A stretch of 48,066 nucleotides of DNA from Pelomyxa schiedti (GCA_020536535.1 JAHLWZ010000011.1:1-48066); one strand, 5' to 3'. Positions 17,601 through 39,771 are shown, counted from the stretch's first letter. Numbers and translations: made by a program. Notes: generated from the letters alone by a model not told the origin.

Positions 17601-19341
17601 TGTCCAGAAAGGAGCCAAATTGCTCAGGTTTGAGTGAAGAGACATTTTCACTGAGAAAGCGTTGTAAAAGGGGAAGATCCAGGAAGTAATCAGGTAATCT
17701 AGTAGAGATAAGAGGAAACAGGTAAGTTGTGCAACAACAGTTTCAACTCTTCCATTGAGAGTGAATGCTTGCTGACATAACACTGGATTGAATTGGTGTA
17801 AAAATCTTTGATATCAGGAGGGATCTCTGATCCCAGCACATCCACCCCAGTCTGCAAGGATAACTGTTTTTCCCTTAGCTTGTTTCTCTCGGGTTAGATT
17901 AAAAGGTTTACCTTGGAAAAATTTGCAGTCAATATATCTTGTGTGCTTTGAAGTTGAGCGAAAAGTGGAAAACAGTGTGGAATTTGTTTACCCCAGTTTA
18001 AGGTGCAATGCTTCTGAAACCCACTTTATCCAGTTCCACCATATGGCTAATCGCTTCAAATTGACTTTATCTTTCCTTGTAGTTGTCAATTCAAGAAGAT
18101 CATTATAGCAGTTAGTCATGTCCTGACTTGACTAAATAAAAGTGTAAAAAGAAAATGCCTACCTGTATTCCATTTCTGTTTCCAATAGGAATTGAGAATC
18201 CTCCAGGGCACACCCAAAACACATTAGATATCACTTCTCCTTGGAGTTGTTCACATTCATGGGCACTGCAGTGGTGGAGCTCATTTTTTATTTGCCGTAG
18301 GACACCTTGTAACACACTGATACTCACACTAGCAGGCAGCTTGCCTGAGAGTGAGTTATAAAGTACAGGTGCTCTGCAATAGTGATAATGAATAAATAGA
18401 ATAAACAATATATGAAACCTGTTAAAAAAGGTAGGAGTAAAACTGAACGGCAACTGTGTAAGGAAGTGGTCACAGAAGGTATTCCAGTTTGGAACAAACT
18501 AACATAAGATTAGGTTAGTTACGAGAAACTATCAACCTCATTCTCATTTGTTCCTTTGACATAATGCAATGCTAGATACAAAATTTGAATATGCATTTCA
18601 AATCCAGAACTCTATAGATGGTTACAATATTGTCTAATCCCATGATGGATAAAAACCAGCAACAGTGTTTTAGACCGCAGAATCGGGTCAACACTGCGAT
18701 GGGTAATCAACTGTAGCAGTTTCTCAAACATAGCTTTGTTATGTTGAAATAGGTTTGCCAGTGTCTTTATTTTTATTATTCAGTTAAAGAAAAGTATATA
18801 CTTCAGGTACCTGAAGAATAGAGATATCTCTTGTTTCAACTTCATCTGATGGACATTTTCCAGAAATGTGATAAAGTACACGATCAAGGCAACGAGGAAC
18901 ATCCTGTAAAATGGCCAAATTGTGTGCAGGATTCTTCTCAAAGGGTATTTCCCTAAGCAACAAGGATTCAGAGAAAGGGAAAAGCAAGAGGCTTGCCTCT
19001 TACTCTGTCAACTTTAGCAGCATTGCCAGTAAGAACGGAAAATTATCTAGAACGTGACTGCCCGTCACAGAAGGGACGTCAGAAAGGTTTAACTCCAGAG
19101 ATCGTGACAAAGAAACCAAGGCCCCACACAACCAAGATATGTGGGCTGAGAAATTAGGATTGTGGGCGAGGGCGTTGAATTGATCAAATGTCGAGAGGAG
19201 GGAGAATGCCGTGCGCGTGTAATTGCTGTCTAGAGTTGTGGACCATCTCCCATGCGCTCTTGATACAAGCTCGGGGCAGGAGACAAGGTGTGTGTACCTA
19301 TGGTAACGCAGTGTCAATCTCCGCGGGTCCGGGCAAGCCAT
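2687..19341 (-). CDS. RNF213: Giant multi-exon RNF213/mysterin-like AAA+ ATPase, paralog B (roughly 4,500-5,000 aa; no RING/RZ seen; Pro-rich linker plus helical C-terminal extension)
   Basis: RNF213-order motifs: LNFLSGHQL, P-loop GPACSGKS + HFDIS, YVLTPDFALKLL, Walker A GGTGTGKT, Walker B CFIDE, KEVMCD..LDG, FFVAALN, VRAPPLSM..IVDFGKL, IRDIVR, ENLFCTVVCLDSRIPLVIVGPP|GCSKT, LLDEVGL, SNRILDEAKTNR, FFHLRDF, RNFGG, KVKIAMELG..FYDVFNRHY, VHDNFRVIV, PLLNRFEK. Start MACPDPRR at 19341, stop TAA at 2687. Exon-by-exon homology with the plus-strand paralog from first to last exon supports a single gene. Confidence 0.85.
9230..14342 (-). other. Dynein-like multi-AAA core of paralog B
   Basis: AAA2-type P-loop ~13484-13507; AAA3 Walker A ~12351-12375 and Walker B ~11670; AAA4 Walker A split by an intron (~10668-10740) and Walker B LLDE ~10460; AAA5/6-type motifs 9250-9600. 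Confidence 0.85.
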
Positions 19342-19714
19342 TTATTTTGTGGTGGTTAATGTGTACACAGTGGGTGCTGAGGTGAAACCAGCACTAAATA
19401 TGGGAAGGGGCAGTTACAATTCCCTGACTGTGTTATCGGCACTTTCGGCATACATGGACACCAATCGTTAGTTTTATCTTGTTATTCCTTTTTGTTTTCT
19501 GCCGAGTTCGGTACATCGAAATTTTCAACTTGGTTTTCCTGAAACTTTGAGACCCTGAGTCTCCACACCACCGCCCTATCCATGAAACACCATCTGGAGA
19601 GCGATCTTTTCTCCTTCCTAGTTCCATCAGATTCTCAGAGGAACTCTCTGCACCATCAAACTACAATTGCAGACAAAACCCGAAAAAAAGAAAACCAAGC
19701 AACACGACGAACAG
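19342..19714. promoter_or_regulatory. Probable bidirectional promoter between paralog B and the CNBP-like gene
   Basis: ~370 bp non-coding spacer between two divergent ATGs; no specific element identified. Confidence 0.5.
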
Positions 19715-21048: not shown

Positions 21049-24000
21049 ATGTCGGGGTGGCCGCGCTTCGATGTGAAGGGCGCCATAAAGAACAAAGCCG
21101 AGGCGGTTGGCCGCGCCGTCTCGTACCTGGTCCCCGGGTCGTCCGCGGCGGCGCACCCGCGGCCGCCGGTCGACGTCAAGTGCGAGGAGATCACGACGCT
21201 GGTGGGCACCAACCTCGTGAGCAGGATGCTGGGCGACACGGCGGGCTGCGGCGTGGCGCGCGACCGCGGCTTCACCAGGGCCCTCACGGCGATGCTGGAC
21301 GAGTTCGCGGCGCTCAACGGCGGCGGCGGCGCCGGGGGGACGGCGGCGGGGGGCACGGAGGAGGAGAGGGCCGGGAGGGTCAGGAGGTGCAGCGAGGCGC
21401 TCGAGGCGTGCGTGAAGAGGGTGTGCTACGGTGGGATGAGGAGCGCCGTGTTCATGCACAACTTCCCTGTGATGATTTATTTGTGGCTGAGGTTCCACCA
21501 GTATGCTCTGTTCTTTTTTTTTTTTTTTTTGGTTAAGTGAGAGGAACCAGGTTCTTGGAGGGTCTGAAAGGACCCATGATAGCGCCTATTCGGAAGCAAC
21601 TTGATGATGCAATACAAAAAGTTGACATAGACATCTTTGTTGTTCAGGAGGCTACTCGGCAAGAAAACTTTATCACACAGGTTCGATGGCATTTAGATAA
21701 GCTAAACTAACCTCACAAGATTTTACAATCTCTGCTTCAAGTAAACAGGGAGTTTTATCTTAATCTCACTGCTCTCAGACGTATTAGCATTTCCAAATCC
21801 GTCACAGAAGAAACTAAGGTCATTACCTGTTGTTCCTCTGTTATAAATTCAACCAATCTCCAAAATATCACAGGTTTTTTTTGTTAATGTGCATCTTCTA
21901 TTACTGCAAATGGAGATTGTTTCCTCATCTCTAGAAACCGATGTATATTTCATTCTTGTGCATTAACGAAATCGTTTACATCTTTCTCCAGGAGCATATT
22001 CAAACATGGAAGCTATTTATAGCCGATTTACTTGGCCGTCTATCGTTCTCAGCAAATGTCAATTTCTTTGACAGGTGTGCTTCTCTCTAATATAAAGCCA
22101 ACAAAGAAATTCAGTGCCCAAACGCACCGTCCTTTTTTATTTGCTTCTGTTGTGGCGAGCCATTATGGACCCTCTGTTTCAATTGCTGTCATTGAGGGCA
22201 TTACACAGATGGTCACAAATCCCCACTGTCGTATAGCGTCCGAGCCTCGTGCCAAGCATTTGCCCTTCACTTTATACTGGGCATGTCCCACAACTTTTTC
22301 CATACCCAAGACAACAGCTGCCATTGTGGTACTTTACTCTTTTCTATGCAATTAAATAACTTTATCTTCCAGGAACTGTCAAGGGCGTACGATAGTATGG
22401 AATCTTTACATTTTGATTTTGCTCAAAATCTATAGATCTGATGAACCTGGCGTGCCCCAGTCGAATTGGTGAAAGGATACCACCAGAAGCAGCAAGTCCT
22501 GTTGTTGAATACCTTGCAAATTGGTGGTATATACACAAATTTGTTGTTCCCAAGCTTTGTGAGGAACCAGGGTATGTGTAAATGTAATCTGGTTCGACTA
22601 ACTTTTTCTGAAGACAAAAAGCTCTCATGACAAACTCTCTAGCTAAAGTAGATCCAGTTTATGATTCTAAGTTCTCTAACCTTTCACACGAAGCTTTCTT
22701 GCCAATGTGGCATTGCACCCCTTTTTAAGTGCAAACCATTTCAGGAGCCCTCCGTCAAAGCCTTCCTGGAACAGTCACTAAAGACATTTTTAGATAACAT
22801 GTCAGAAACGGATTCCCCTCTGTCCATCTTAGACTTCACCAGGTTTCCGTGAGATATTTGACTCCCTTGTAACTGCTGTTAGGATTCCTGAACAACTTGT
22901 ATCATTTGACAATGTCACTAAGTTCCTCCAACAAATAAATGAAACCTCAGTAACGGAGGTTGCAAATCTTTTTGATATTTGCACACGAAAAATCCCTCCA
23001 AATGTGGATTTACAATTTGCCTTGGCCCCATTTACCCAGAGGCTAAAAGACAGGACCCTGTAGGCGACTTGCATTCCTTACTCCACATAATCCTTTCATA
23101 GGGAAAGTATTATTGAATTGTTCAAAATCCTTCTTAAGTGCAAGAGCTACTTCCTTGTTCATGATAACCCAAGTCATGTAGCTGCAGTAAAGACCGCACT
23201 GAAAGTTTATGTGTGTTTGAGTTGATGGATCAAAGGGGTAACATACATACAGATGCCTTTGGAAGATTTTCATCTCGAACAATTTGAAATGCTGGTGGAG
23301 CAGCTACACATTTGTGAAAAAGGAAATTTGTCTGAAATGTACTTAGTTTTTATAAAGGCCTTATGTATGTAGCACCAATTTTTGCCCTTCATCATGTTCA
23401 TTTTCTTTTAGCTTCCTTGATTGTAAGGTATTGCGAAGTACTTCATTCTTGGAAAATCCACCTTTTCTAGTTCCCAAGTGGAAACAGAGGCTCCTCTCCC
23501 AGCGCAACTCAATCAACTTGGGTCATTTCTTTTCCCTACTATTGATAGGTGGACAAGTGGTGTTGTTTACTATTCAGGATCCAGTGTTCACTCTCCGGAC
23601 AAAGTATCTCCACAGCTGAAAAGTGCACTTTTGGTGGCTGTCTTAGGTGAGTGTCTGGAAGTGCGAACCTTACTTGATGAGAGTTGCATCTGCCTCCTTT
23701 CTCCACCTGTTTTATCTTTGCTTGTTCTTCATAATGTTGAAATGAACAATGTCTTTTATCCCAGTTATCATGACGCATGTACAAAGGCACATGACAATTC
23801 TCTTTTCAAACAGTCCTAATGTACCCCCAAAAAGTTGGTGGAGAAAATTAAAGCCGCTATTGATTGCCTCCATGATAAGTATATCACCAGACAAAAGTTG
23901 AACGTGCTCTCAGAACCAAGGCAAGTTCCAACATCCTATACTAGGCTCTTTTCTGACTGGAGCAGTCAACCACAGACATCTTTTGCAAACTTGATTTACA

Positions 24001-27000
24001 TGCAGCAAAAACTTTTCCCTGCAACATCAATTCCCACTCTCCAAGAGTTGATAACAGAATTTAATGACGCAGAACTTCAGACAGAGCAGATAAAACGGGT
24101 TTGGTTGTGGCTCCTGCAGCGAGCACGGTTGCAACTGCCCACTGTCTCTGATGTGGATGTACTTGCCACATTGTTCCAGTTTGTGCACCTAATCATTTGA
24201 AGGCTAAATCTGACCCCCTTGCTGTAATCCAACGTTATGTTGATGGTTGTAAATCTCACCTTCATTCACTCGGTTTTCCTGATGTCTTTGATGCAGTAAG
24301 CTTTCTTATTACAACATTCTACAACTAAATGGATGTAGTTGAACTATTTTTTGGAAAAAAAAAGTACCTATTTTGATGCCTTAATTGTGCCGAAAATCCG
24401 GAAGTGCTATGTACCTTCTTGGTTAAATATTCTGTACTGATGGGATTTAGACTAATGCTGTTCCCCTTGACCAGGGGCAGCAACTGGCTCGCTTAATTAG
24501 TGCCACTCTGGGAGATCTCCGCAAATTTATTTCTGGTAGTGTGTGCCTTGATCAGGTCAGTATGTTGATTGTAAGCTCTGTCTAACAAATTACTAGATCA
24601 AGCAACTTGATAAATCAGGTGCTAGCAACCCCGTCGATGAGGGGGCTATTCTGTAATTCCGTTTTGTTGTTCTTCTTTTCCTTATCCCGGCTTAGAACGG
24701 ACTGGTTTGAGAAGCACTCAGTTGGACTATTTGAACCTATGGCTTATGATCGTCAGATCCTCAATGATGCCCGGGAATTAGTGAACTATTTGGAAAATAT
24801 ACCAGCTGTCTGTGAATGTTGCCATCAATGGAAAATTTCTAAGGGCTCCCGCAAGCTACTACAGAATGAATTGCACTTGTTGACCAGTGAAAATTTTGTA
24901 ACTTGACCTTTAACTCTGTTTTTTCTTTCTTATAATTACAGATGTCAAGGGAGGAATGTAGTGGCAAATTAAGGTTTCTACAACAACAGCTTGGGGAAAT
25001 GACACCATCTCAAATGTTAGTCTTTAAATCCTTCAGTTTGATAGAAGATGTGCTGGATTGGTATCGAACAGTATGTACAGACTAGATATTGCATATTAAT
25101 CTAAACAAATGTGCAGTTTAAGTCAGACAAAGACTTCCAGGACAAAGAAGATTTTGTGAGAGCTGACACCCAAGGGTATTTTTTTTCTTATTTTCCCTGA
25201 GAAATAAATAAGCTTGTAGATGGAAATTTGGGCAAGATCTCTCAAATTGTGTTGCTCGTGTCCGACCAGCCATTGTCACATTCCAACAAGTTCTTGACCT
25301 ACCAAACCGTAAAAGTATACCACTGAGAGAGCTGTGTGTCAGCCTTGTACGTACCATGGGGCCGGTGGGTGAATTCCAGAAGAATTTGGATGCCATCCAT
25401 GAGAATCTCCCTCGAATCAAGGTGTTATTTACACAGTCGAAAGGACTTAATCCAGATGCTCTCCTGCCTTGTAAAATTCAGTTTTTCAAGATTGTTTTGT
25501 GATCCTTCAATAGACATCAACCAGCTACGCCAGAATGGCCGATACAAGAGCTCTCTATCACTTCACAGAAAAGGGGAATCTTTAGTTTTACTGCAGGACC
25601 AAAAAGAGGAATCAAGATCTTACTTAATAAACCTCATGAGGGCAATGAAAATATTTATTGACAGTTCAGGTTTTCTCCCATATTGGTAGCACACAAATTA
25701 TCTTACAACTTGCTCAGAGAAAGGTGCGGAGACAAATATCTCAGAGTTTATTCAACTCTTTAATTGTGCGGAGGTATCTTTCAATGTGTTACAACCTTTT
25801 TTACCTGTAACCACTATGTACGTTTTCTTCAGGAAATCCACCAAGGGCGTCTTCGTCTTGAGGCATTAGGACATCCTAACTTTCAAGGCTCAGAGGATTT
25901 TTTAAATGACGTGGGTGAATTGAATTCAGTTGAGAAGCTTACTGCCACATCAATAGAGGTTCCACAGTTCACTCAGTGCTCAACTGATTCTCTCAAAAGA
26001 TTAGGAACACTTTGAATGAATGGAAGGGTGCAATTGAGGCACTTCATGAGGTCCTTAACTTACTTTTTTTTGATTTGGATTCATTTATATAGGAACCAAG
26101 ACTGAACTTTTTATCTGGAAGACAGCTGACACAATTTGGTGCCACTCTGTCTATGGTTACTGATCCTGGTCTTGGGCAGGACTTTGTTGCAAGTCAAGTC
26201 GCATCATATGTATGGTACTGCTTTCCAGAGCGAACCATTTCTGCCCACACGTCATACCAGTGTGTATGTACTGCACTAAGCTTGATGGGGGGTGTGCCAA
26301 CTGGTGGTTGGACTCCCCTTTCCACACTTACACTTGTTCATCAATTCGTCAAAGAACTCGCACAACACAGCAACCCCGGCCCCAACTCCCCTGAAACAGC
26401 CAATGATATTTCCATTGTCTTGGCAGAGAAGTTTTCTCCACATGGGATCCTGTTTTTATTATTTGAGCTTTTCCACTTGACTAGACCACATCCATCGTTG
26501 ATACTTTATGCAAGAACCGCTTCACATAACGATTTAGAGCGTTTCCTGAAGTGTGTCACTCTTTTTCCTCATCTCATGTTTGCTCTTGTTGGCGTGAATG
26601 AAATGCCTGAAGATATGAGAAAAGTATTGTACAAATGGGTAAATGAAGTGACAACAGGCACTTTGGAAGGCAAGGAGGGGAATAATAAACTCAGCAACAA
26701 CTACGGGAAAATGGTACTAATCTTCACTGAGAGAGTGGGCATTGATATATTCATGTCATTTGACACCAAGTATCAAGAAAACGTTCTGCCAGATGTGTTT
26801 GCACGACTGGAGACATCAAATGAGCTATCATTGCAAGCACTATGTAGAAACAGCTTACATGTGCAGTGTTACACAGGTAAAGAAAGGTCAGGAAAAACAA
26901 CAGAGATCAGACACAAAATGGATTTGCAAAAAACTCCCAACACGAGAAATCTCTTCCTTGCAATCCAGGAGGGATTCTCATTGTCCAACCTGTTGAACTC

Positions 27001-30000
27001 CTTGGAGATTATTGAAAAGTGGGCCAGGGAGCTCGAAGGGGAATGCCAGGTCAATGTTCATTTTGATATCAGTGCCTACGCCAATCTTCCTCCTGTTGCA
27101 ATACTGTTCTTCAACTTGGTTGTGTGGAGAACCGTGTGTGACCCCAGCACAGGAAGAATTTTCCATCTTCCCTGTGCCACCAAAACCAGTTTCTGTAAGT
27201 GGACACTGTTTGTAGAAGTGTCTGCTGCCCCAAAGAGTGATGCTCTTGAGGGATTTGGGCAAGAAACAACAGAGAAAGTCTTAGAGCACATTCCAATTTT
27301 GTGGTATCTGTGTCATTGCCGCATCCCAGAGGACTCACAGATTCAAGTGTCCAACTGCACACTACCGTTCATTGTTGATGAAAATGCCTTACTTGTTGCC
27401 AAGTGTCTCCATTTCTGTAGTGATCTCTTTGCTGAGGCATCCCTCCCTCAATTTTTAGATTCTGTTGAGGCAGTACCAGCTTTTGATTTTAACCAGGAAC
27501 TAGCTCATTTTTTTTCTCTCAAGAAGGACATGAATGATATTCAAAGACAAAAACACTTTGTTGAATTGCTCAGTGAACGCTGCCAGTGGATTGTGCAACA
27601 GGCAAGAGAGCGAGTCAAAAGCAGCGTCACAGGAGTCCATCAACCTCCCCAGTTTACTCTGCAAATCCTTTTCAACTTCCTCGTGGAGGAATGCTACAAG
27701 CTATGTCGAAGGACTCTTGACTCAGAAAAACAATTTTATGTTACTAGGGAAAGCCCAAGTGCGGCACATCATAGAGTCAAAATTGATGAACTGAGCACCT
27801 CCCCCCCTCCTGCTATTCTTGCCTTCATGGCAAGGAGAAAGTTTCAACCCCCCAAAAAAATGGATATAATAGATACCGAGATCGAAAACCTCAACACTCG
27901 GCTCATGAAAGAATTGGGATTGACCTTTGGTGTTAAAGACCTTAAATCTATTTTAGACAAGCAGCACTACGTTCTGACCCCTGACTTTGCTCTCAAACTA
28001 CTTCTTGTCTATGACCATATGCTTGCAAAACAGAATTTAACACTTTGTGGTGGAACGGGGACAGGAAAAAGTGAACTGATGAGGGTGTTCTGTGAAATTG
28101 TAAACTCACATAGCCAGCTTGTTCCTGATATGGCAAGAAAGATACACCGTTTTCTGTTTTATAAGCTACCAATTAAAGTTCTGTCCCAAGCAGAGGTAAC
28201 ACATTTCTGACAACCATTGAGTACTCCTAACTTCACCACAAGGTTGAAAGATTCAGGCCTCATTGTACGGATCACACAATGGCAGCAGCCAAATTTACTG
28301 AGGTTGTCAGCGAAATGTGCCACCTTCTAAAAGAAGGGCAACCTGTGTTGCCACTTGTGGTGAATGCTACAGTTGAATACATAAAAGAAAAACTGGGATC
28401 AAAGAAATACCTCTGCAAGACTGACCCACTTGTAAAACTTCTCAGTGCAGCAGCACCACAAGCAATCTCAGAAGTAGACTTCCTACAAGGCCTGCTGGAT
28501 TGTCGTAATGCCAAATTCAACTCCTTCTTCCATCGCATAAAAATGCATCAACGAATCACGGCAGATGAATTTCGAAATCATATACAGCAGGCCGTTACTG
28601 CTGCTGAAAATCTCCCAAGCAAAGCTCGTATTGTATTCTTTATTGACGAATGCACTTCTACATCCCTCCTGGGGATGGTGAAGGAGGTGTTATGTGATCA
28701 TCGCCTAGATGGTGCCCCTCTTCCTACTCAGATTTTTTTTGTTGCTGCCTTAAATCAAAATCGCGATGAAGATTCTTCTGCATCCTCTCCATCAAGCTTC
28801 GTGCCAATAAGCTTTGAAGGGGTGGACCACGGCATGATTCAGTCTTTTGCAGTTCGCCCTCCACCCTTGTCTCTGAAGAAGCTCTTAGTGGATTTTGGGA
28901 AACTCAACATGCAACAAGAGAGAAGTTTCACTGCTGGTTTGATTGAAAGCCGGCTCATGCGCACCAATCTCTCGGAGCACGACAAACATCTCACCCACTT
29001 GATATTGATGGCACAAGACTTCGTCAACAAAGCGCACATCCCCCGAGTTACTGCAAGCATACGAGACATCATGCGGGCCGTTGATCTTTATTCATATTTT
29101 TCTGGCCATACCCGATTTATGCATGAACTTCCTTCTGAATCAAAAGAACGAAAGAATTTGGAACACTGGCAAGCACTGGTAGGTCTTCTTCATGCTCACA
29201 CATTTTTTCACATTCTCAAAGGCTTTATCCATAGCAATGACTTACTACTTCAGACTTCCATCCCAAGATTTTGTTTCGCAAGAGGCAGCAAGAGCTCGTT
29301 CAGATCCGCATCTTTCTGCATTTCAGTCGCTAAAGCCCATCCCTGTTGAGTGCACAAGGGAAGAGTTCCGTAAACACTTAGAATCAACTCTCAAGGCCAG
29401 AGAATTTCACAATGTACCTGATAGACTCTTCAAGTACGACGAATTCTTGGGAAAAGTTTTGGAACAGCTATGTGATAATACTTCACTTCCACCCGGGATT
29501 GCCAAAACGAGAGCATTCATGGAAAATCTCTTTTGTACTGTGGTGTGCCTTGATGCCAAGATACCCCTGATCATTGTTGGTCCACCGTATGTTAACCTCT
29601 TCTTGTTTTAGGGGTGGAAACAGCTTTTTCTCTAAATAACTATTGCAGAGGGTGCTCCAAAACTCTGAGCTTTAAGATTGCTGTTGATAATCTGAAAGGA
29701 AAGAGTTCTATGAAACCTTTCTACAGATCACTGCATCACATAATACCCTACAGGTTGAACTGCTTCCCTGCCTTTTTTCTCATTTTTCTTCAACAGGTAC
29801 CAATGTAGCGAACAGTCCACAGACACAGAAATTAAATCTGTTTACAAGTCAGCAACTACAAGGCAGAGCGCGATAACCTCAGATTCAGATGAACTGTGTG
29901 CTGTACTGCTAGACGAGGTTGGATTGCCCGATGAAAAGCTATCCCCTCTTAAGGTTGACTGCTTTTTTCTTCCATAGTTATAACAATACATACTATTAGA

Positions 30001-33000
30001 TACTGCACTACAGACTTGATCATCCAAAGGTTTCTTCAGTATTGCTTTCCAACAAGATTCTCGATGAAGCAAAAACAAATCGTACCCTCATGCTTCTCCA
30101 AAGTGAACCACCAACACACGACCTTGAGGTTCTTGCACAAGGCAAGCAGTCTATTTAAAGACAAGATACCTAGGAAATCTAACATTGCAGTAAAGGTTGC
30201 ATATATGGGAATAATATAGAGACAGTTCCAGCAAGCACCAAAGAACTCCTTTCCGCTTTATGTGCAGCATACCGAGAAGAAGTTGCGAAGCTCTATGGGT
30301 CACCATATCCAAGCCGCTTCTTTCATCTACGTGACTTTGTGTACTTCTTGCGTTACCTTGGCAAGCATTGTGCAAGTGACATTTCTGGGACAGGAATGTT
30401 TAGTCTCACAAAATCTCATGTTTTCCATGGCCTGAGGCGAAACTTTGGGGGATTAGAAGGACCCCAATTCATTTCACTTGTGGGCAATTTCTTCTCGAAG
30501 ATAACGAGCGTACTGAAGAGATATGGCCAAGAACCGTGGGAACTTAGTCAATCTGAAATCCCTCACACTGAAGTTGACATGATCAAAGAGAGCCTGGGTG
30601 AAAAACTGAATGATGACGAAGATCCCAATACTGCCCCTTTTAGATATATCATGCTTGTACATTCCTTTTTCCTCTTTTTTTCCCCTAAGCTACCTGCAAC
30701 ATTTCCTAGCTCGATCCAACGGAGAACGGGGAGGCAATAGATCTACTTTTTGACCTTGGACTCTGTCCCCGAGCAACAACCTCAGTGTGCTATGTTGGTG
30801 ACTTCAGGGGGGATAACGACCAACGAGTACGTGCAAGTGTAGTTGAGAAAGTCAAAACAGCCATGGTGAAAGGTTCAGGCAGCTCTATTTTTGGTGATTT
30901 TTATACGTTTACAGGTGAGACGATCCTTCTTGTGAATTCTGCCAGTATACACAGTTCGTTTTATGATGTGTTCAATCGGCATTACACTGTCATTCCAACC
31001 ACAACTAACAATGTCACATCAAATCTCTGTTACGCCAATCTTGCTGCTGGTTCTTTTTCTCATCCATGTCTTGTACACAACAACTTCCGGGTTATTGTCC
31101 ATATTCCCAAGTCTTCTTTGCAGAAAATTCCAACCCCCTTTCTCAATCGCTTTGAAAAGTACACTTTGAGTATTGAGGATGCCCTCTACGAGTATTTAAG
31201 CAAAGTGCCAATCGTGATCAATGAGGAGAAACAAAATCCTTTCAACTCTTTGAAAGATTCACTTATTGAGACTGTGCACCAACTTCATGTTGTTTCGTCC
31301 AACTCTCATCTATTGTACGGAGTAGAACCCAAGGAAACTGTTTGCTCCCTTATGTTGAATACCGTAGAACGTACTTTCCCGATGTGTCTGAATATGATTG
31401 GAACTCAACAAGACTTACCACCTCTGGAAAATAACTATGCTTCCTATATACCACAATTTCCACCACTCCTTGGATGTTTCCCTGCAAAAGATACAGAGGC
31501 CAAAGCCTCACAATTTGCAGCAGCAGAGCACTGGTGGCAGAATAAACAGAAGTACATTGCAATGGCCAACACACACATACTGCAGTTGGCTCGACCAGAA
31601 AGCATCCATTTCCTTAAAAAAAAAATTCCATCCTATTACCTCGAAGCCTACCTCCTTTGGCAAGAGCATTTCTCCTTGTGCAGATTCATCAGTACCCTAG
31701 TTTCCAAACACTGGGAAAAACCACATGAAGCTGCTGACTTGCCTGCGATACAACAAGTCCGCTGTATTCAAAAGTGGGGGATTTTTATGAGAACAAGTGC
31801 CGAGCTCTTGAAGCTCCCGAATGACCACCAGATACAGGAAGCAACCCTTTCAAGTCTCCGAGAGCATGGCATCATAGAGAGCGGGCACAGAATGGAGGAG
31901 TACGTGCAAGTCTTATCTCTCACTGAGATGGCCTCAAGCCAAGACTGTGCTGATCAAGTGAGATCTTTTTGCTGCAAGCCTCTGGGTTGCCTGCTTATTT
32001 GTGTTGCGGATCTTGCCGTTGTTACACCCAACCAGGTCAATTTCCTCCGCAATGAGATTAATGAACAGTGGAAAGAATATGAACCCCAGGTGGTTGTTGA
32101 AGGCGTGCGCCCTTCAAAACCTCAAAAACAAAGAATTGCCATCGTGGTGCTACATTTCCCTCCTGAGATTGGCTTGAGAAAGGAGTGCTGTTATCAGGCG
32201 ATTTTTCTGAAGGCCTGGGACTTCACATACATTGACTCACTTGGTGTGTCTTCAGCCACCGGCGCTGCTTCCCCCATTATTGAAGCAGATCCAAAAACGT
32301 GGATGGCAAAAGCATTCCGACTTGAGGCAAAACTGGGTAAGGACCTACATCAAACCCAGATATCCGAAATGAACATGTTCAAAGACTTTTTCTTCGATCT
32401 CCTCCGCCAATTTTGCACTCTCATGCATGGAAATGGGTTGGTTGGTGGCAGTGGATTCGAAAATCAGGATGCTCAGGCATTTTATGACAAGGACAATTCC
32501 AAAAAGACACCCGACGATGTAGCTGAGATGAGATGTAATATAATCACGTCTCTGTTCGAAGAAAAACCCTTTCTCTATCGGGACATAATCCAGAGGTTTG
32601 CACAGTCATGGACTCCACAGTTCTTGCATGCCCTCGTTCAACAAGCAAGCACCACGTTGTATCGTGGTGTTAGCATAACGAGCTTTGTCAGTATTTTGTC
32701 GTCATCATTGCACACATTCATGACACCCCTTTTATCTTCAACTCTGAGGATGATACTCTCCTCCTACAATTTGCATTCGGTTCTTCTAATGGACAGCAAA
32801 GATAGTGAACTGATAGAACTTGTGCACAGAATTTTCACGACTGTGCCGATACCAAAGATGACACCAGAGGTGATAACAAACGCAAGACGTGTAATCCCAA
32901 TGGTGGACATTTGTCGCATGCACGCTTTTCCGCCGCGCCTTGCATTCTATGATATAGTAGCAACACTGGTAACAAATAAAATTGGACATGCCTGCAGGTC

Positions 33001-36000
33001 ACTACGTGATCAACACCGAAATGCACAAATTGTCTTCCAAAAGGTGTCAGAATCTATAGCCGAGGATGGAAATCTCAACTCCATTCTTGAACACATCGAG
33101 AACCATCCTCGTCTGTTTGAGTGGTTCAAGTATGACTTTATCACTCGCAGTCTGAAAATAACCTCTCTCCATTCATCCCGTTTCGAAGTTTTTTGCGACA
33201 GCAATTACTCAAAGCAAGAGATAAGAGAGAAATTAGAGCAATTTGAGAAGCTTATGCTTAATATTGTTCAGTCTTACAAAGTGACGCTGCAGGAAAACAT
33301 TGTCAATCTATTCATAGTCAGACGTTTTCATGCAGATGAAATCAATTACTTCAGCCAACTTGTTTTACCCCTGCAGTTAATGCACCCTTCACTGTCTGTG
33401 AAAGATTGGCAAGTTTTCAAAGTACCATCCTTCAAAACTGTGTTGGAGATGGAAAAATGGGTTACAAAGCAGTCTGCACAGTTGCTTTTCAAAAGGCTCC
33501 GTGGCATTCTGGAACTCCAAGCTCCAGAAGATAATAATAATAAAAAAGAGATGATTAGTAATTGGGGAAAATGCTATCGATGGTTCTATTCATCTCTCAA
33601 GCCCCGCAGTGAGCTCAGCAGCCTCTTATCCACAGAAATCGAGACACTTATGCAAATTGATGCAATGCATGTACTCTTTCTTGTATTGCTCAACAGTGAC
33701 AATGTCTTTGATTTATCATGTCCGTTCCTTCAAAATCCCACCACCTCTGGGTTGCTGCAAGCCTTTTCTGGGAAGAAAAATACTCCAGCTGAAAGGTTAA
33801 GGGAAGGCCTGAAACTTGCTTCACAGCTTTTACCCGACCCTCCACTGCCTCACCACACACAAATCCCTCACAGCCTAGAAAGTATTGCGGAGTATCTTCT
33901 ACAGGAAACTCCGAAGAACTCTCATGTTATGAGTAATGACTGCAGTGACAACATTTCCATATTTCTTGAGGTACCTTCCAAGCTCTCCTCACCATTTTAC
34001 TAATGAGGAATGGAGATCTGCAGTGACACGCTCCCAGACTTCGATACAGATAAGAAGCTGAAATATTACTGTAATGCCCTTACCGCCAACGTTGGTTGGG
34101 TTTCTAATTTCCTTGTGACATGGATAAAAACAAAACCTCAACAATGGAGGGAGCCCTTTTTTGCCTTGCTCGCTTCTGTATGATATGATAACAGATTTTA
34201 AAATACCTGCCCTTTGACCAAACAAACAAATATAGGTGATTGCCCAACGACCAAACTTCAATAGAGACACCTATACAACCAAACCGGACCTTCTGTCACC
34301 TGCACGCATTTCCCCCACGTTCTCCCCTCTTGATTTCTATCTGTTCCACTTCCTCACTTGCCTGATGGATGTAACCGTGCGCCGTGGCTCAGATCCACAG
34401 AACGAAGCTAAAACTGCCTCTCAGTCCTCCTTAAAGGAGGTTGTGGACTATTACTTGCAACTCCAGTCCATTAACGTCTGGGAGACAGGTTGACATCCCA
34501 AATCCACCCCCTTGCCCTGCTCAAAATGAAAATCAGACGTAGAGTTTATTCTCCACCACCACAAGAAAACTGTATGTCAGGCTCTCATTCTCAAAAAAGC
34601 GGCGGGGCTATTGGATACCTCAAACAAACGAGTAACTTTACTTGACCAAGTAACAGGCCTTGGAGAACCTACCCTTGGCATCATTTCCCAGGTTAGTTCC
34701 AATTTGCATTTTCCGGACTCTAAAAATCAAACGAAGGTTCTAGGCTCAAATTCTCTCACTGACGGTAAAGCCTATTTCATTGGTGCACTTCCAAATGATT
34801 TCACTGCTCTGGAGCTGATACGATTGCCCAAAGAAACCTTACAGCAATTGAATATTGTTGAAATGTATCTTACTCCATGAAAGTGTGGTTGGTAACTCAC
34901 GTGTTGAATAAAGGAGCACCACTGAAGATGTTACGCTCCTGGATACCGCTCGATTCTCTTTCACCCTTGCAGACATACCAGCAGATTTTGCACAAAAAAG
35001 GAGTAGCATCACACGAGACAAGTCACCACAAATTGAATCTTCATTTGTTGAACTACAAAGAACCTACCTCAAAGTTTCTACAGGCTTTCAAGCCAACTCA
35101 CTTGAAGAAGTCATACAACAAGAAATGTCCCAGGATAATGCCAAGCAAAGTAGCAACTTTCTGTGTCCACACAGTTCTAATGCCCTTACACAGGCCACTT
35201 GAAGTTGTGTCTTATTTTGGGCATCTACTATGAATGTGTACTGGCAAATCGACAGTGCGACTCATTGGACTCTCGCATCAAGATCTGGAGGAATCTTCTC
35301 TCTCTGTCAGCTCTGGAAGTCGACGGAATACAATTTATAGCGGGTTTGAACAACTTCATCAAGAACGAAACCGCGGTCTCTGTATACTTTTCTGATCCCA
35401 GAACAGCCAGTAAAATTCTGTTGTTTTGGCAATATTAATTTCACCTTTTCAAAAGTCTTACTTGTCAGTGTATTGGCCATTGTTACGAGTTTCCCGGCAG
35501 ACCACCTCCTGTATAAACAGATATATAATACCAATTCGTTGAAGGGTCTTTTCAATGGTTTTCCTTCAACGGCATTGTGCAAGGACGTTCCAAGGTAAAT
35601 AACTCGTTGTGGAATCATGACGTTTGACAGAAACAAGGTATAAATTGATCCTAGATATTATTACCTGGGGTACTCTTTGTTGGGCTCTCATTCTCGACCC
35701 CACTTCCCACCAACACATTCAGAAGTGGTTTTTCTCTGGGGAAAATGAAACTCCTTCAACGGGTTCTGCCATACCTCAGACGCTTCAGGCCTCAGCTTTA
35801 CACAATTTTACTGACGCTGTAAGTGCTCTAGAGAACGATACAGACACAAGACAAATGGTGCCACTGAATGACTCCCTTGTCATCTCATTGTTTTTTTTTT
35901 AGAACCTTGATGCCTCTCATTATTTCACAGAATCACTACTGTTCCTCTGGCAGGTTACAGCCCACTCTACATCTTGTTCGTTGCAAATTTCTTTTTAGTT

Positions 36001-39000
36001 CTTTTGCTGCTTACACAGACGTGTCGGGTTTACAGATAGAGAAAGAGTTGTTGAATATGAATCTACTCTCAAGGCACTTGTTTTTGGCAGCATCGACAGG
36101 CAGTACCAGTATTTAAAAGCTCTCTACATGAGGAACCTTTATGTATGAATGAACGCCGAAATAATCTGCTCTAACAATAATTTTAGTCCAAACCCAAATA
36201 CAAGGCATTGTGTGACATGCGAGACACTTGTACAGGCACTATCTGCTCCTGTGTATTCACATGGGAAGATGTCCAGGGGTTACTGAGATTATCTGGATCT
36301 TGTTCACAAGGATTTCTGGCTGAATTTATTGCACTTAGACACTGCCTTCGAGCGATTTTGAAGCTACCAAGACTGGTTCACCTTTATAAACTACTCAATG
36401 AAGCATTTGGTCCGCATGTTGAAGGTTCAAACATTGTTGTCTTCAGACTTGTAATCCTTTTTTTTTTTTTTTTTTTTTGTAGCAGCTAATCTTCACCAAT
36501 CTGTTGCTGAATGCATTACGCTACTTGCCAAAGTTGACCCAGCCACAGCAGATACGTTTAAAACCTTATTTGAGAGCCTTATCCCGGTTTGGGAAGAAAT
36601 TCGTATCTTAGTGAATGGGTTGAAGACCCATTTCTATCCAAACACAAAACAAATGTACACAAGAGTGGTAATAAGATTTTAGCATGACTTGAGAATAGGT
36701 TACCAACAGCCACTTTTCCACCTTTGAGCCTTGAGTCTCCTTTCGTTACCCTCATCAGTTTGAGAACAAACGATGAGACCAATGGGCAGGGTGATCTTCT
36801 CTTTAAAATGGTTGGAATTCTTGTGGACGTTCAAAACTATCTCCTCCAACTGAGACAAGAATATGATACTGGTGTGTGGTGCTCGCCAATTGTTGTCCTT
36901 TCAGCTAATCGGGTAAAGATGCATTGAACCCACATAGCTTTGTTTTTGAGAAGTCAATCCAGCACTACAATATAGAATATCTTCCGTTTTCTGTTGATAA
37001 GCCTGACACCAGTACCTGATTCCCACATTATCTAAACTCCTTTGTGAACAAACTCAAAAGATTTGAGTGTTCTGATCAATGTACCCTCATCTCAAGTGGT
37101 GGAACAGGATTTGATTAGATACATAACTCTGCCTCCTGAGGGCTCAAAACTTAACACCAAGATTGACGCTACTCAACTTGCCATTTATGTATGGCACCCG
37201 CATCTTGTGCACTTTGGGTGCTCAACGGTTTCCTACCAAAAAAAAAACAAAGGTAATTGGAAAGTACATGTCGGGGAAATGCCTTTTGGACAAAGATGAA
37301 TTGAGGTCGGTCTTTCCTATAGGAGCAATGACAAATCCCCAGCAATCAGCTGTAACGATACAACCTGTTTGAGTCACCATCCCTGTTGCGTGTGATAACC
37401 ATTTTGCTAGGGCAAACATGGAGACACTATCGAGTTAACATTTCAAGAAGAAATAGAAAAGTAATTCTCCTTCATACTTCATGTTATTTATTTCTTCTCT
37501 ACGAAGGTTGGGAACAAATTTCGAGGAAGAAATTCCCAAGTCTATTCCGCTTGACAGAGCTTTGAACAGTTGAAACTCTTCTGAAATATAAAATAAAATA
37601 ACAACACCTATTTTCCTTAGACGAGCCTGAAGATAAATTACGGGATTTGGTTGTGAAGTTGACACAGTTAATTCAGCGTCTACACCGAGACATTCAAATC
37701 CACCCTGAAGCTTCTGAAATCAGGCGATCGTTTTCAGAGTGTTGGACTTATTTGATGCCAACCCACCCTGTGCCACCCTACCTTTCTTCCCATAGTCTGA
37801 AAGTGTCGCACATCAAGTCTGTGGGGAGGTGCATACTTGCGAAATACAAAGGAAAGCAATGGCTATTCTCAGACTTACCTGAGGAGTATAAAATGAACCC
37901 AGTGGCGGACCAACGGACTGCATTGGAATCTTCCTTCTCCAAGGTAAAGTTCCCGGAGTGAAGACTTTCATTCAAAACAAAAAGGTTCTCTCCCTATCCC
38001 TTCCTGAGAGGCAAAGGCTAAGCAGTGTTGTTGAGAGGATGTGCTCCTTTTTGACAAAGGATCATCTGAAAAACGATTATAACAAATCTCTCTTGTCTCT
38101 CTTCGAAAATGTCAAAGAAATGGTACTCAATCTTATATCGCTATTCATCACTCATTGAACCTAAAAAAATAAGAATGAACAGTATCTGTCTGATGTTAGA
38201 GCTTTACTTCCAAAGGACTTAAAAATTTGTCACTATTGCTTCTTTATGAGGAATCTACACACCCTGTGTGGGGACTTATTGCTCTCTGTTACCACTGTAC
38301 GTCGTGATTTTCATTTACTCCTATAATTGCCAATACTGCAGGGAATGGAGGAGCAAGAAACTGAAGTCACACAACTCGAGGTAATCCTCTTGCCAACACG
38401 TCCCAACACTAAATAACTCAATTGCAGATGCCTGATGGAAAGTTCCCTGACAATTTAATGGTCTCCCTGCAAGATATTGGGACCGGTAACTGCTATTTAT
38501 TGCTTTATTTGTAGTAAAAGATTCGTGGCAGAGGCTCTATCGTCACCTGAAAATGACAGTGTCGAACAGCCTATGCCACCAGCCCCGATAGACACTACGG
38601 AGCCGCTACCTGAAGAAAGTGCTAAGCCACCCTCCATGGTTTGTGTACCAGCTGTAAAGGAGCCATTTCTGACAACTCATAGGACCCAGAGCCCTTTGAA
38701 GCAAGGATGACAGCTCTTCTACAGGACCTTGAAGAGGTTGTGTCAAAAAGCAAACAAGAGGAAGCCGACTTTCAGATTTATGTTACCAGCATGAAGGGCA
38801 ATTTTAACGCAATGAAGGAGATGCTGGAGACTGTGAAGCAACAACTTCCGAGTGAATCTCGTGGATTGCCTATTTTCAACAACGTGTCAGTCTTATTGTC
38901 CAAACAAGATGACGCATTGGAGGAAATGGGTCTTACTATAGACATGACAAAAGAAAATGAGGAAACTTGGAACCAACACAAACGACGGCTTGATGAGCTG

Positions 39001-39771
39001 CTCTATGAAGCTCATCAACTCTCAGAGATAGCCGCAAAAAAAGAGACTTCATCTGACGAAGTGAACGAGATTGCACAACGAAGTCAGCTGGCGTCTGGGG
39101 TTCTGGGTGAGATGAAAGCTCTTGCAGAGAATCAAAATTCAGCTGCAATGGAGATGGATACAAGCAGAAACACAGTGGAGGCATCATTGATGGAAATCCA
39201 AGAAGAGCTTGAGCGACTGAAACTACGGCAACAAGAAGAAGAGCGGAAGAAGCTGGAACAAGAAGAAGCACGGAAAAAGCTAGAACAAGAAGCAGCTCGA
39301 AAAAAGTTCGAGCAAGAAGAAGAACGGAGAAAGCTGGAAGAACAAAGGCTGGCACAAAATTTTCCCAACAGACATCAGCGCACAACCAGCACAACCACAC
39401 CAGCACTGCCACAGCAATGCAACTACATCCCTCCACAAAATTTCACAGCAACATCCAACTCTCACCGGCGCACTACCAGCTCCACCAACATAACGCAACT
39501 ACCACAGAAACCTATGTACAGCAACACCACAAGCACCACCATCTTCACTGCAAACACACCACCACCACCATACAATGGACAGCAACCCTATATCACCTCA
39601 CCTTCCCAACCACAATATCAAAGGCCAGCTCCCCCTTGTACAGTACCCCAGCCCACAACCAATCCAGCACAAATGACACAACAATGGCCTCCACAGCAAC
39701 CCTACAGACAGTACCAACCACCAAACCCCACACAATTTCATCCCTCACCTTATCCCCCAGGCCGGCACTAG
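21049..39771 (+). CDS. RNF213: Giant multi-exon RNF213/mysterin-like AAA+ ATPase, paralog A (roughly 5,000-5,500 aa; no RING/RZ seen; coiled coil plus Pro/Gln tail)
   Basis: Start MSGWPRF at 21049. Motifs: GKERSGKT + HFDIS, YVLTPDFALKLL, GGTGTGKS, FFIDE, KEVLCDHRLDG, FFVAALN, VRPPPLSL..LVDFGKL, SIRDIMR, ENLFCTVVCLDAKIPLIIVGPP|GCSKT, LLDEVGL, SNKILDEAKTNR, RNFGG, RYIML, FYDVFNRHY, VHNNFRVIV, PFLNRFEK. CTD-like FLAEFIALRHCLRAILKLPRLVHL, GQGDLLFKMVGILVDVQN, KYMSGK. Stop TAG at 39771. Confidence 0.87.
26100..31200 (+). other. Dynein-like multi-AAA core of paralog A
   Basis: P-loop 26876-26899; Walker A 28049-28072; Walker B ~28640; intron-split Walker A 29579-29663; LLDE ~29910; AAA5/6-type motifs 30790-31170. 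Confidence 0.85.
39235..39345 (+). repeat. Coding 27-bp tandem repeat x4 (EEERKKLEQ-like; single alpha-helix/coiled-coil type)
   Basis: EEERKKLEQ EEARKKLEQ EAARKKFEQ EEERRKLEE in the last exon of paralog A. Confidence 0.8.

What the first reader, a model, noticed from the sequence alone, without database searches (positions are those of the whole stretch)
33300..36420. Full-length RNF213 scaffold with apparently neither RING nor RZ finger
Seen: no C3HC4-type Cys/His pattern in the post-AAA exons of either paralog, and no CxxGH..CG..CxxC..IGG RZ motif. In paralog A, HLLYKQIYNTNSLKGLFNGFP runs almost directly into RYKLILDIITWGTLCWAL (~35500-35690). As I recall, these resemble the segments before and after the RZ finger of RNF213, as if RZ were cleanly missing, while CTD-like motifs follow. 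Known: RZ is the catalytic module for LPS ubiquitylation in RNF213. Inference: a ligase-less mysterin class whose output is not intrinsic ubiquitin transfer, either ancestral or by loss.
Basis: partly seen in the sequence, partly recalled or inferred. Interest (0 to 1): 0.8.

Follow-up and report, generated by a model that had tools for sequence, protein, structure and literature searches.

The report
Amoeba RNF213-like giants missing catalytic loop
Two head-to-head giant genes of the amoeba Pelomyxa schiedti are true relatives of the human immune ubiquitin ligase RNF213. They keep its ATPase motor and ligase scaffold but have lost, by deletion, the small element at the spot where RNF213 carries its catalytic zinc finger, so they look like natural catalytically dead copies.

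Summary
The window is a whole 48-kb contig of Pelomyxa schiedti. It carries two divergent giant paralogs: A (+ strand, annotated protein P0152, 5283 aa) and B (- strand, P0004, 4624 aa).

- **Family:** both are RNF213 homologues. AAA3/AAA4 match a vertebrate RNF213 at BLASTP E 3e-42. The post-AAA region matches RNF213's E3 module and CTD (hhalign 99.5%, E 4e-22). An AlphaFold model of A matches the human E3 module at Z 18.7.
- **Fingers:** neither paralog has a RING or an RZ finger in any frame.
- **New here:** this Amoebozoa-rich clade has no zinc-binding RZ. It carries a nearly invariant PGS..DCG..MG loop at that position, and its Cys aligns, with moderate confidence, on RNF213's catalytic Cys.
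- **Losses:** A lacks that loop (about 23 aa, a separate small exon in a sister paralog). B lacks the whole ~350-aa module. A has Thr at a second invariant Cys; B, P0003 and P0151 show a gap there.
- **Direction:** the loss is derived. The four loop-less paralogs nest inside loop-bearing ones, and the genome also holds an RZ-bearing RNF213 gene.
- **RING:** its absence is normal outside vertebrates.

Other first-reader notes of this scan flag similar genes elsewhere in this genome.

The parts
21049..39771 (+). Paralog A, RNF213-like giant AAA+ gene (annotated protein P0152, 5283 aa, named 'AAA+ ATPase')
   Evidence: P0152 maps to the window at 91-100% identity from 21049 to 39768. It is colinear with paralog B.
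28049..28072 (+). AAA3 Walker A of paralog A (GGTGTGKS, P0152 1904-1911). Coordinates are computed from the tblastn mapping.
   Evidence: Regex hit. It aligns with GETGCGKT of Candoia RNF213. Weak Pfam P-loop hits fall at the same place.
29405..29590 (+). Exon holding the AAA4 P-loop of paralog A (GPPGCSKT, about P0152 2384-2391). Placement is approximate.
   Evidence: BLASTP against vertebrate RNF213 aligns VGPPGCSKTLS with IGKPGSSKSLA, and LLDEVGL with VLDEIGL. The exon is conserved with B.
30710..33970 (+). Large exon of A, covering the rest of the AAA ring, the hinge and the start of the E3 module
   Evidence: Open frame. RNA-supported donor at 33970. AlphaFold model residue 1 is P0152 3566, about window 33383, and aligns from human RNF213 3849.
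34914..36435 (+). Exons of the E3-core-like module that A keeps and B lacks (equivalent to P0002 3526-3895)
   Evidence: No counterpart in B by tblastx. Matches P0002 and P0001. Most family members have this 275-370-aa segment.
35456..35594 (+). Exon ending ...GFPSTALCKDVP, the segment just before the RZ-equivalent site
   Evidence: RNA contig pieces and junction arithmetic. Translation. It aligns to the pre-RZ helix and LPTMP motif of RNF213 proteins with high column confidence.
35595..35637 (+). 43-nt GT..AG intron at the place where sister paralogs carry the small exon coding the DCG..MG loop. This is the site of the 'cleanly missing' element.
   Evidence: Sequence. RNA contigs join 35594 to 35638. 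A has 22 residues where P0001 and P0002 have 45. In the P0001 gene the loop lies in a frame of its own between two frame breaks.
35638..35953 (+). Exon starting (R)YKLILDIITWGTLCWAL, the helix that follows the RZ-equivalent site
   Evidence: RNA contigs cover 35634-35857 and give a donor at 35953. Model helix 611-631. Family motif N..W....W.
36491..36654 (+). Exon region where A has Thr in place of the family's second invariant Cys (the GC motif, P0002 C4015)
   Evidence: BLASTP of A against P0002 aligns GL-KTHFY with EIPGCPLQ. The Cys is in 44 of 50 sequences, and A, B, P0003 and P0151 are among the 6 gapped there. It is invariant in alignment A6.
38683..39771 (+). Last exon of A: coiled coil plus a Pro/Gln-rich tail, appended after the CTD-like region
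   Evidence: RNA-supported acceptor at 38683 and contigs up to 39795. Open frame of 362 aa.
2690..19455 (-). Paralog B (annotated protein P0004, 4624 aa)
   Evidence: P0004 maps at about 96-100% identity over the large exons. Its longest contig is 48066 bases. Its AAA core matches solved RNF213 structures at E 7e-48.
5664..5709 (-). Exon junction in B, around a 44-nt intron, where the ~350-aa module including the loop is absent
   Evidence: P0004 3674-3838 maps to 6290-5709 and 3839-4136 to 5664-4555. The gap in P0004 opposite the module shows in alignments and hhalign.

Best explanation
Paralogs A and B belong to a lineage-specific expansion of RNF213-like giant AAA+ proteins in Pelomyxa schiedti, with about eleven close copies in the genome.

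Shown:
- They keep intact AAA3 and AAA4 Walker A/B sites, the RNF213-specific E3 module fold and a CTD-like end.
- Their clade, rich in Amoebozoa, has none of the four zinc ligands of the RZ finger. At the same position it has a nearly invariant ordered loop, PGS-x(5-8)-DCG...MG(G/N).
- A is about 23 residues shorter at this loop, which in a sister paralog is a separate small exon. B lacks the whole ~350-aa module around it.
- A has Thr at a second invariant Cys of the clade. B, P0003 and P0151 show a gap there.

Moderately supported: the DCG Cys aligns on the catalytic Cys of RNF213 (mouse C4462).

Inferred mechanism: A and B can still bind and hydrolyse ATP and present the E3 and CTD surfaces, but they cannot form the E3~ubiquitin thioester at the RZ-equivalent site. 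They would then act as ATP-driven scaffolds, sensors, decoys or regulators (pseudo-ligases), possibly working with loop-bearing or RZ-bearing paralogs, and not as ligases themselves.
For: **Identity and family**
- P0004 and P0152 are P. schiedti 'AAA+ ATPase' proteins encoded on this contig.
- P0004 matches solved RNF213 structures at E 7e-48.
- P0152 matches Candoia RNF213 by BLASTP at E 3e-42 over 745 aa, with Walker A and B of both AAA3 and AAA4 conserved.

**E3 module and CTD**
- hhalign of the clade's post-AAA profile against RZ-bearing RNF213 proteins gives Prob 99.45%, E 4e-22, over 1051 colinear columns to the C-terminus.
- A second, tool-run hhalign of the post-module region gives 98.8%, E 5.4e-17.
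- The AlphaFold model of P0152 3566-4765 has pLDDT 84.9 and pTM 0.77.
- The nine best Foldseek hits are all RNF213 (E 7e-10 to 3e-7); the next hit is at 9e-3.
- VIA-align gives Z 18.7 over 833 residues against human RNF213 3849-4979; the next hit is Z 8.2.

**The loop**
- DCG is present in 39 of the 46 sequences that carry the module, and D, C and G are each at least 90% conserved.
- DCG aligns on the ECG of the RZ finger. A focused alignment gives Prob 70%, E 4e-5, against 0.8% and E 0.07 for a reversed control.
- The Cys of ECG is the nucleophile, mouse C4462. The zinc ligands are C4451, H4455, C4471 and C4474 (PMC12075652).

**Losses**
-.
- RNA contigs support the junction in A and show that A is expressed and spliced.
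- The loop is a separate small exon in the P0001 gene.

**Direction of change**
- In the tree, P0002 and P0001 (both with the loop) branch off before the group ((P0151,B),(P0003,A)), which has support 0.96. The gene on C1063 falls in the RZ clade.
- A's module has lost the extra cross-genus conservation seen in P0001 and P0002: 17-19% against 27-29% identity to Mastigamoeba in the first part of the module.
Against: - No biochemical data exist for any member of this clade.
- The equivalence of the DCG Cys with the catalytic Cys rests on an alignment with only moderate column confidence. In mouse RNF213 the zinc ligands are themselves needed for activity, so even the loop-bearing relatives may not be ligases. 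In that case 'loss of catalysis' in A and B would be the wrong framing.
- Another residue or a partner protein could supply the activity.
- The tree uses one region, FastTree and a midpoint root. The A+P0003 node has support of only 0.70.
- Expression of B was not tested.
- The N-terminal 1800 residues were not compared with the RNF213 N-arm.
Confidence: 0.6

Rival explanations
1. A and B are still ubiquitin (or ubiquitin-like) ligases that use a different nucleophile or mechanism. Examples would be another cysteine of the E3 shell or CTD, or E2 activation by the CTD docking surface without a thioester intermediate.
For: The whole E3 scaffold and the CTD-like region are kept and fold with high confidence. 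In RNF213 the CTD docks E2~Ub (PMC12075652). Other members of the clade carry a C-terminal USP domain, so the scaffold stays tied to ubiquitin chemistry.
Against: Both near-invariant cysteines of the clade are missing in all four loop-less paralogs. No RING, U-box, RZ or IBR was found in the window or in the annotated proteins.
Confidence: 0.2
2. A and B are young duplicates on their way to becoming pseudogenes. The losses reflect relaxed selection and not a new role.
For: The family is large and fast-evolving: about eleven copies at 50-76% identity even in the AAA core. There is a partial extra copy of B's last exons at the contig end. A's module has lost its elevated conservation. Three of the four loop-less copies have deleted the module altogether.
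Against: Both have uninterrupted annotated reading frames of 5283 and 4624 codons spread over dozens of short introns. A is transcribed and correctly spliced at every junction seen. The Walker A and B motifs of AAA3 and AAA4 are intact. The rest of the E3 module is as similar to its paralogs as they are to each other.
Confidence: 0.13
3. The RZ-less, RING-less state is ancestral. This would be a primitive mysterin that existed before the ligase fingers were acquired.
For: RING is indeed a late and patchy addition.
Against: RZ fingers occur in RNF213 homologues of animals, glomeromycete fungi, Amorphochlora (named by its source) and several unnamed metagenomic proteins. One also occurs in a P. 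schiedti RNF213-like gene on C1063. The loop-less paralogs nest within loop-bearing ones.
Confidence: 0.04
4. A finger exists but was missed because of a mis-spliced or unannotated exon.
For: None found.
Against: RNA contigs bridge the critical junction. The intron is only 43 nt long. Six-frame regex and PF20173 scans find nothing on the contig.
Confidence: 0.02

Closest known systems
RNF213 / mysterin (vertebrate giant E3 ligase; PDB 6TAX, 8S24, 9JWG)
   Same: - The AAA core has conserved AAA3 and AAA4 sites.
- The E3 module fold, which has no other counterpart in the PDB according to PMC7311170, is shared.
- A CTD-like end is present.
- Overall length and domain order are colinear.
   Different: - There is no RING.
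- There is no RZ zinc finger: none of the four zinc ligands, no catalytic Cys and no IGGxxH histidine.
- A has an extra coiled-coil and Pro/Gln-rich tail.
- Sequence identity is only about 24% in the AAA core and about 11% in the E3 module.
RZ-bearing, RING-less RNF213 homologues of invertebrates, glomeromycete fungi and protists, including the P. schiedti gene on contig C1063
   Same: They share the same giant architecture without a RING. They occur in the same genome.
   Different: They keep a Pfam-detectable RZ finger (PF20173). They form the other major clade of the tree.
Loop-bearing clade members: P. schiedti P0001, P0002 and the C791 copy; Mastigamoeba, Balamuthia and dictyostelid proteins, annotated only as hypothetical or AAA+ ATPase
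   Same: These are the closest relatives, at 30-70% identity, with the same E3 module (model of P0002: Z 20.1 against human RNF213).
   Different: They retain the PGS..DCG..MG loop and the second invariant Cys. Some add a C-terminal USP deubiquitinase domain plus SAM domains. A and B have neither cysteine.
ZNFX1 (the other RZ-finger E3, an SF1 helicase)
   Same: It also couples an NTPase to an RZ-type catalytic element. It is relevant only as the second carrier of the element that is missing here.
   Different: It has a different scaffold. It is not homologous outside the RZ finger.

Membership tests
RNF213 family (giant dynein-like AAA+ E3 scaffold) | AAA ring homologous to RNF213, with AAA3 and AAA4 Walker A/B motifs | tested here: met
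   phmmer of P0004 against PDB RNF213 chains gives E 7e-48. BLASTP of P0152 against Candoia RNF213 gives E 3e-42 with both Walker A/B pairs aligned.
RNF213 family (giant dynein-like AAA+ E3 scaffold) | RNF213-specific E3 module fold (E3-back, shell and core) | tested here: met
   hhalign 99.45%, E 4e-22. The top nine Foldseek hits are all RNF213. VIA-align gives Z 18.7 for A and Z 20.1 for P0002 against human 3849-4979.
RNF213 family (giant dynein-like AAA+ E3 scaffold) | C-terminal domain (CTD) after the E3 module | tested here: met
   The hhalign alignment runs to template column 1562 of 1565. This was not checked by a separate structure model of the CTD.
RNF213 family (giant dynein-like AAA+ E3 scaffold) | N-terminal arm and linker | not tested
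   P0152 residues 1-1860 were only scanned with Pfam, which found no domain before the AAA3 P-loop at about 1876.
RNF213 sensu stricto (vertebrate type) | RING inserted in the E3-back domain | tested here: not met
   Pfam and regex scans are negative. RING is also absent from many RZ-bearing homologues.
RZ-type transthiolating E3 (RNF213 / ZNFX1) | RZ zinc finger: C-x2-G-H ... C-x2-C ligands (PF20173) | tested here: not met
   There is no PF20173 hit on the contig although three hits lie over the cut-off elsewhere in the genome. The regex is negative here and positive on controls.
RZ-type transthiolating E3 (RNF213 / ZNFX1) | Catalytic Cys in the (D/E)CG loop and the His of IGGxxH | tested here: not met
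   A lacks the loop and B lacks the module. The residues are defined in PMC12075652.
Loop-bearing (DCG) clade of RNF213-like proteins, defined here | PGS-x(5-8)-DCG...MG(G/N) loop at the RZ position | tested here: not met
   The loop is absent from P0152, P0004, P0003 and P0151. DCG is present in 39 of the 46 sequences that carry the module.
Loop-bearing (DCG) clade of RNF213-like proteins, defined here | Placement inside the clade on a tree | tested here: met
   A and B nest within the P. schiedti group (support 1.00) inside the loop-bearing clade.

The most novel reading that the evidence does not exclude
The RNF213 E3 scaffold has one fixed 'cassette' site that different lineages fill differently. 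The fillings seen are an RZ zinc finger, an IBR/Rcat-like cysteine cluster, a zinc-ligand-free DCG loop that keeps the nucleophile Cys (perhaps working with the second invariant Cys as a relay), or nothing at all. On this reading the loop-bearing amoebozoan proteins are a new zinc-independent kind of transthiolating E3, some of them fused to a USP deubiquitinase. A and B are natural pseudo-ligases that regulate or decoy them, within a fast-evolving and possibly defence-related gene family.
Probability: 0.25. Interest if true: 0.8.

Novelty: new variant of a known kind. Interest (0 to 1): 0.58.

Why it matters
RNF213 is a major human disease and immunity gene, and its catalytic mechanism, a Cys in the RZ finger, was settled only recently.

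This contig shows that the same giant scaffold is old and widespread in eukaryotes. It also shows that the catalytic element sits at a replaceable site, and that nature has made copies with the motor and scaffold intact but the catalytic loop removed.

Such copies are ready-made separation-of-function variants. They allow a test of what the ATPase and scaffold do without ligase chemistry. The conserved zinc-ligand-free Cys loop of their relatives allows a test of whether the zinc finger is really needed for transthiolation.

I found no paper on amoebozoan RNF213 homologues in the library searched. The proteins are annotated only as 'AAA+ ATPase' or 'hypothetical'.

Tried and rejected
- **Single-sequence searches on the post-AAA region:** phmmer of the 1072-aa exon and of P0004 2900-4624 against PDB found no RNF213.
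- **Profile-to-sequence search:** the HMM of family alignment A1 against PDB also found nothing at E up to 10. Only profile-profile and structural comparison revealed the homology. The family HMM did hit four RZ-bearing proteins directly, at E down to 2e-10.
- **ESM Atlas feature search:** uninformative, best score 0.85.
- **Protein comparison on A2 against A3:** failed internally. Local hhalign crashed on the long alignments until sparse columns were removed.
- **Minimal-intron gene model:** my first model put one intron inside an RNA-covered stretch. I corrected it using the contigs.
- **IBR scan of the genome:** it did not place an Rcat-like domain on the distant RNF213-like contigs C957 or C492. 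The scan note about an Rcat-type copy therefore remains untested here.
- **Hidden exon, ancestral state, pseudogene:** considered and scored under the rival explanations.
- **Joined exons:** I built no joined exon model of my own for any search. The database proteins P0152 and P0004 were used by reference, and exons by window reference.
- **Read laying:** done once, on 5901 letters.


Full report
**What the window is.** The 48,066-base window is a complete contig of the archamoeba Pelomyxa schiedti. Protein P0004 (KAH3767876.1, 'AAA+ ATPase') has this length as its longest contig and maps to the minus strand at about 96-100% identity over the large exons. Two giant genes lie head to head around a GC-rich stretch at 20-22 kb. 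Paralog A is on the plus strand at about 21.0-39.8 kb. Paralog B is on the minus strand at about 19.5-2.7 kb. They are colinear by tblastx. A's annotated protein is P0152, 5283 aa, found and mapped. Introns are 41-52 nt with GT..AG ends. Twelve junctions between 33.9 and 38.7 kb are seen directly in contigs of single-cell RNA runs, so A is transcribed and spliced. I did not build a joined exon model of my own for any search. The database proteins were used by reference, and they agree with the RNA junctions in the region of the finding.

**Checking the observation.** Pfam finds no RING, U-box, IBR or RZ domain in P0004, P0152 or their paralogs. A six-frame regex scan of the window finds no RING, RZ or DCG-type loop; the only hit is one loose RZ_core pattern match at 47815-47756 (-), outside both genes. 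The same expressions do find the RZ finger and the RING in genuine RNF213 proteins, for example Candoia aspera RNF213 with RING at 3892 and RZ at 4399. A six-frame scan of the whole genome with PF20173 finds three RZ fingers over the cut-off on other contigs and none on this one. Exon 35456-35594 ends ...GFPSTALCKDVP. A 43-nt intron follows at 35595-35637. The next exon begins (R)YKLILDIITWGTLCWAL. RNA contigs and P0152 both carry this junction.

**Is it an RNF213 scaffold?** Single-sequence and HMM searches of the post-AAA part against solved structures found nothing. The AAA core, however, is clearly RNF213-like. P0004 matches solved RNF213 chains at E 7e-48. P0152 matches Candoia RNF213 by BLASTP at E 3e-42 over 745 residues, with the Walker A and B motifs of AAA3 and AAA4 aligned and intact.

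For the post-AAA part I aligned 31 clade members (A2) and 17 RZ-bearing RNF213 homologues (A3). hhalign gives 99.45% probability, E 4e-22, with 1051 colinear columns running to the C-terminal end of RNF213. A second, tool-run comparison of the region after the module gives 98.8%, E 5.4e-17. An AlphaFold model of P0152 3566-4765 is confident (pLDDT 84.9, pTM 0.77). Its nine best Foldseek hits are all RNF213 structures (E 7e-10 to 3e-7; the next hit is 9e-3). VIA-align gives Z 18.7 with 833 residues aligned to human RNF213 3849-4979, against Z 8.2 for the next hit. According to the structure paper, the E3 subdomains of RNF213 have no other counterpart in the PDB (PMC7311170), so this match is specific. 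The N-terminal arm was not examined.

**What sits at the RZ position.** The relatives found by the exhaustive and the word-based protein searches fall into two groups.
- One group carries PF20173. By the names their sources give, it includes animal proteins (sponge, Hydra, mollusc, tunicates, vertebrates), glomeromycete fungi and Amorphochlora.
- RING families occur only in the vertebrate entries. A few others show RING-like or U-box inserts at the same place.
- The other group holds the closest relatives of A and B. These are P. schiedti paralogs, Mastigamoeba, Balamuthia, Physarum, dictyostelids and metagenomic proteins. None of them has an RZ or RING.
- Most of this second group carries a 275-370-aa segment that B and P0003 lack. 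Inside that segment is a striking motif: PGS, then 5-8 residues, DCG, a variable linker, MG(G/N), and then a helix with N..W....W.
- DCG is present in 39 of the 46 sequences that carry the module, and D, C and G are each at least 90% conserved.

In the profile-profile alignment the helix and PGS before the loop align with high confidence on the pre-RZ helix and the LPTMP motif of RNF213 proteins. DCG falls on the ECG of the RZ finger with moderate confidence. A focused alignment gives 70% and E 4e-5, against 0.8% and E 0.07 for a reversed control.

In mouse RNF213 the Cys of ECG is C4462, the transthiolation nucleophile. C4451, H4455, C4471 and C4474 bind zinc, and H4483 is the proposed base (PMC12075652). 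The clade therefore keeps a Cys at the nucleophile position but none of the four zinc ligands. In the AlphaFold model of the loop-bearing paralog P0002 (pLDDT 85.4; Z 20.1 against the human E3 module) the loop is predicted as an ordered element with pLDDT 81-90.

**What A and B lack.**
- A has 22 residues where P0001 and P0002 have 45. The PGS..DCG..MG stretch is gone, and the junction coincides with the 43-nt intron.
- In the gene of the sister paralog P0001 (contig C448) the loop lies in a frame of its own between two frame breaks, with the flanking exons ending ...CPGSG and starting HRFALNTITW. The simplest event in A is therefore loss of one small exon.
- B lacks the whole module at an exon junction around 5664-5709. 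This corresponds roughly to human RNF213 4320-4690, as I estimate from the hhalign blocks. P0003 and P0151 lack it too.
- A second Cys (P0002 C4015) is invariant in alignment A6 and present in 44 of 50 sequences of A4. In A it is replaced by Thr. In B, P0003 and P0151 the alignment shows a gap at that column.

**Direction of change.** The genome holds about eleven close copies on contigs C11, C347 (three), C579, C197, C448, C791 and C526, plus more distant ones on C957, C1063 and C492. The C1063 gene has its AAA match and, about 3 kb downstream on the same strand, a variant RZ finger preceded by IPTMPHD (39.6 bits against PF20173).

A FastTree of 112 sequences over 676 columns, midpoint rooted, separates two clades. 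One is an RZ/RNF213 clade that includes C1063 (sister to the animal proteins, support 0.99). The other holds the loop-bearing proteins. Within the P. schiedti group (support 1.00), P0002 and P0001, both with the loop, branch off first. The four loop-less copies then form one group (support 0.96) as (P0151,B) and (P0003,A).

Loss is therefore derived. The order 'loop first, then whole-module deletions' is plausible but not proven. A's module has also lost the extra cross-genus conservation that the module shows in P0001 and P0002.

**Mechanism.** Shown:
- intact ATPase motifs;
- an RNF213-type E3 scaffold and CTD;
- absence of RING, of RZ and of both clade-invariant cysteines;
- expression and correct splicing of A.

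Inferred: A and B cannot carry out RZ-type transthiolation. They act instead as ATP-driven scaffolds, sensors or regulators. The rival readings are another catalytic route, decaying duplicates, and the ancestral state; they are scored separately. Several loop-bearing relatives in other Amoebozoa have a C-terminal USP deubiquitinase domain plus SAM domains after the CTD region (UCH E down to 1.5e-43). This keeps the clade as a whole tied to ubiquitin.

**Novelty.** I found no paper on amoebozoan or RZ-less RNF213 homologues in the library searched. The proteins are annotated only generically. Two other first-reader notes of this scan flag RNF213-like genes elsewhere in this genome, one said to carry an Rcat-like domain in place of RZ. 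I saw IBR/Rcat-like cysteine clusters at the same variable site in distant relatives from other sources but did not confirm the P. schiedti case.

I class the finding as a new variant of a known kind. It is of real interest to RNF213 specialists, and it rests on computation alone.

Noticed in passing
window 19842-20783 (+): An intronless open frame with seven CCHC zinc knuckles (PF00098, E 2.8e-41), CNBP-like. It sits in the GC-rich stretch (57% over 20-22 kb) between the two divergent giant genes.
   Followed up: no
window 2-633 (-), next to the N run at 636-735: A partial extra copy of the last exons of paralog B (P0004 residues 4263-4407, 64-98% identical). It abuts an assembly gap. It is either a third, truncated copy or an assembly duplication.
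   Followed up: no
G000 contig C1063, minus strand, about 17150-4350 (loci L006-L008): A separate giant RNF213-like gene of P. schiedti with a variant RZ finger (C-x2-C-G in place of C-x2-G-H) preceded by IPTMPHD. In the tree it groups with the RZ/RNF213 clade.
   Followed up: partly
L001 (C807:56634-56771, -) and L002 (C231:81305-81427, +): Two canonical RZ fingers (72 bits each) on contigs with no RNF213-like AAA match. They probably belong to ZNFX1-like or other RZ proteins.
   Followed up: no
P0158 (Balamuthia), P0010, P0016 (Acytostelium), P0171, P0169: Loop-bearing RNF213-like proteins of other Amoebozoa carry a C-terminal USP deubiquitinase domain (PF00443). Three of the five scanned (P0158, P0010, P0171) also have SAM domains after the E3/CTD region. 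The result is a ligase-like scaffold fused to a deubiquitinase.
   Followed up: partly
P0091, P0096, P0105, P0113, P0117 (distant relatives); G000 contig C277: IBR/Rcat-like cysteine clusters sit at the same variable site of the E3 module in four of these distant relatives (P0105 was not mapped). Weak IBR hits fall in 1800-aa open frames on C277, which may be the Rcat-type copy noted elsewhere in this scan.
   Followed up: partly
window 38683-39771 (+): The last exon of A codes a coiled coil with a repeated EEARKKLEQE-type stretch and a long Pro/Gln-rich tail that RNF213 does not have.
   Followed up: no
window 38278-38864, run X2: One RNA contig differs from the window by many substitutions and small indels and joins at non-GT..AG sites. 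It is most likely a transcript of another paralog laid on A, not editing.
   Followed up: no
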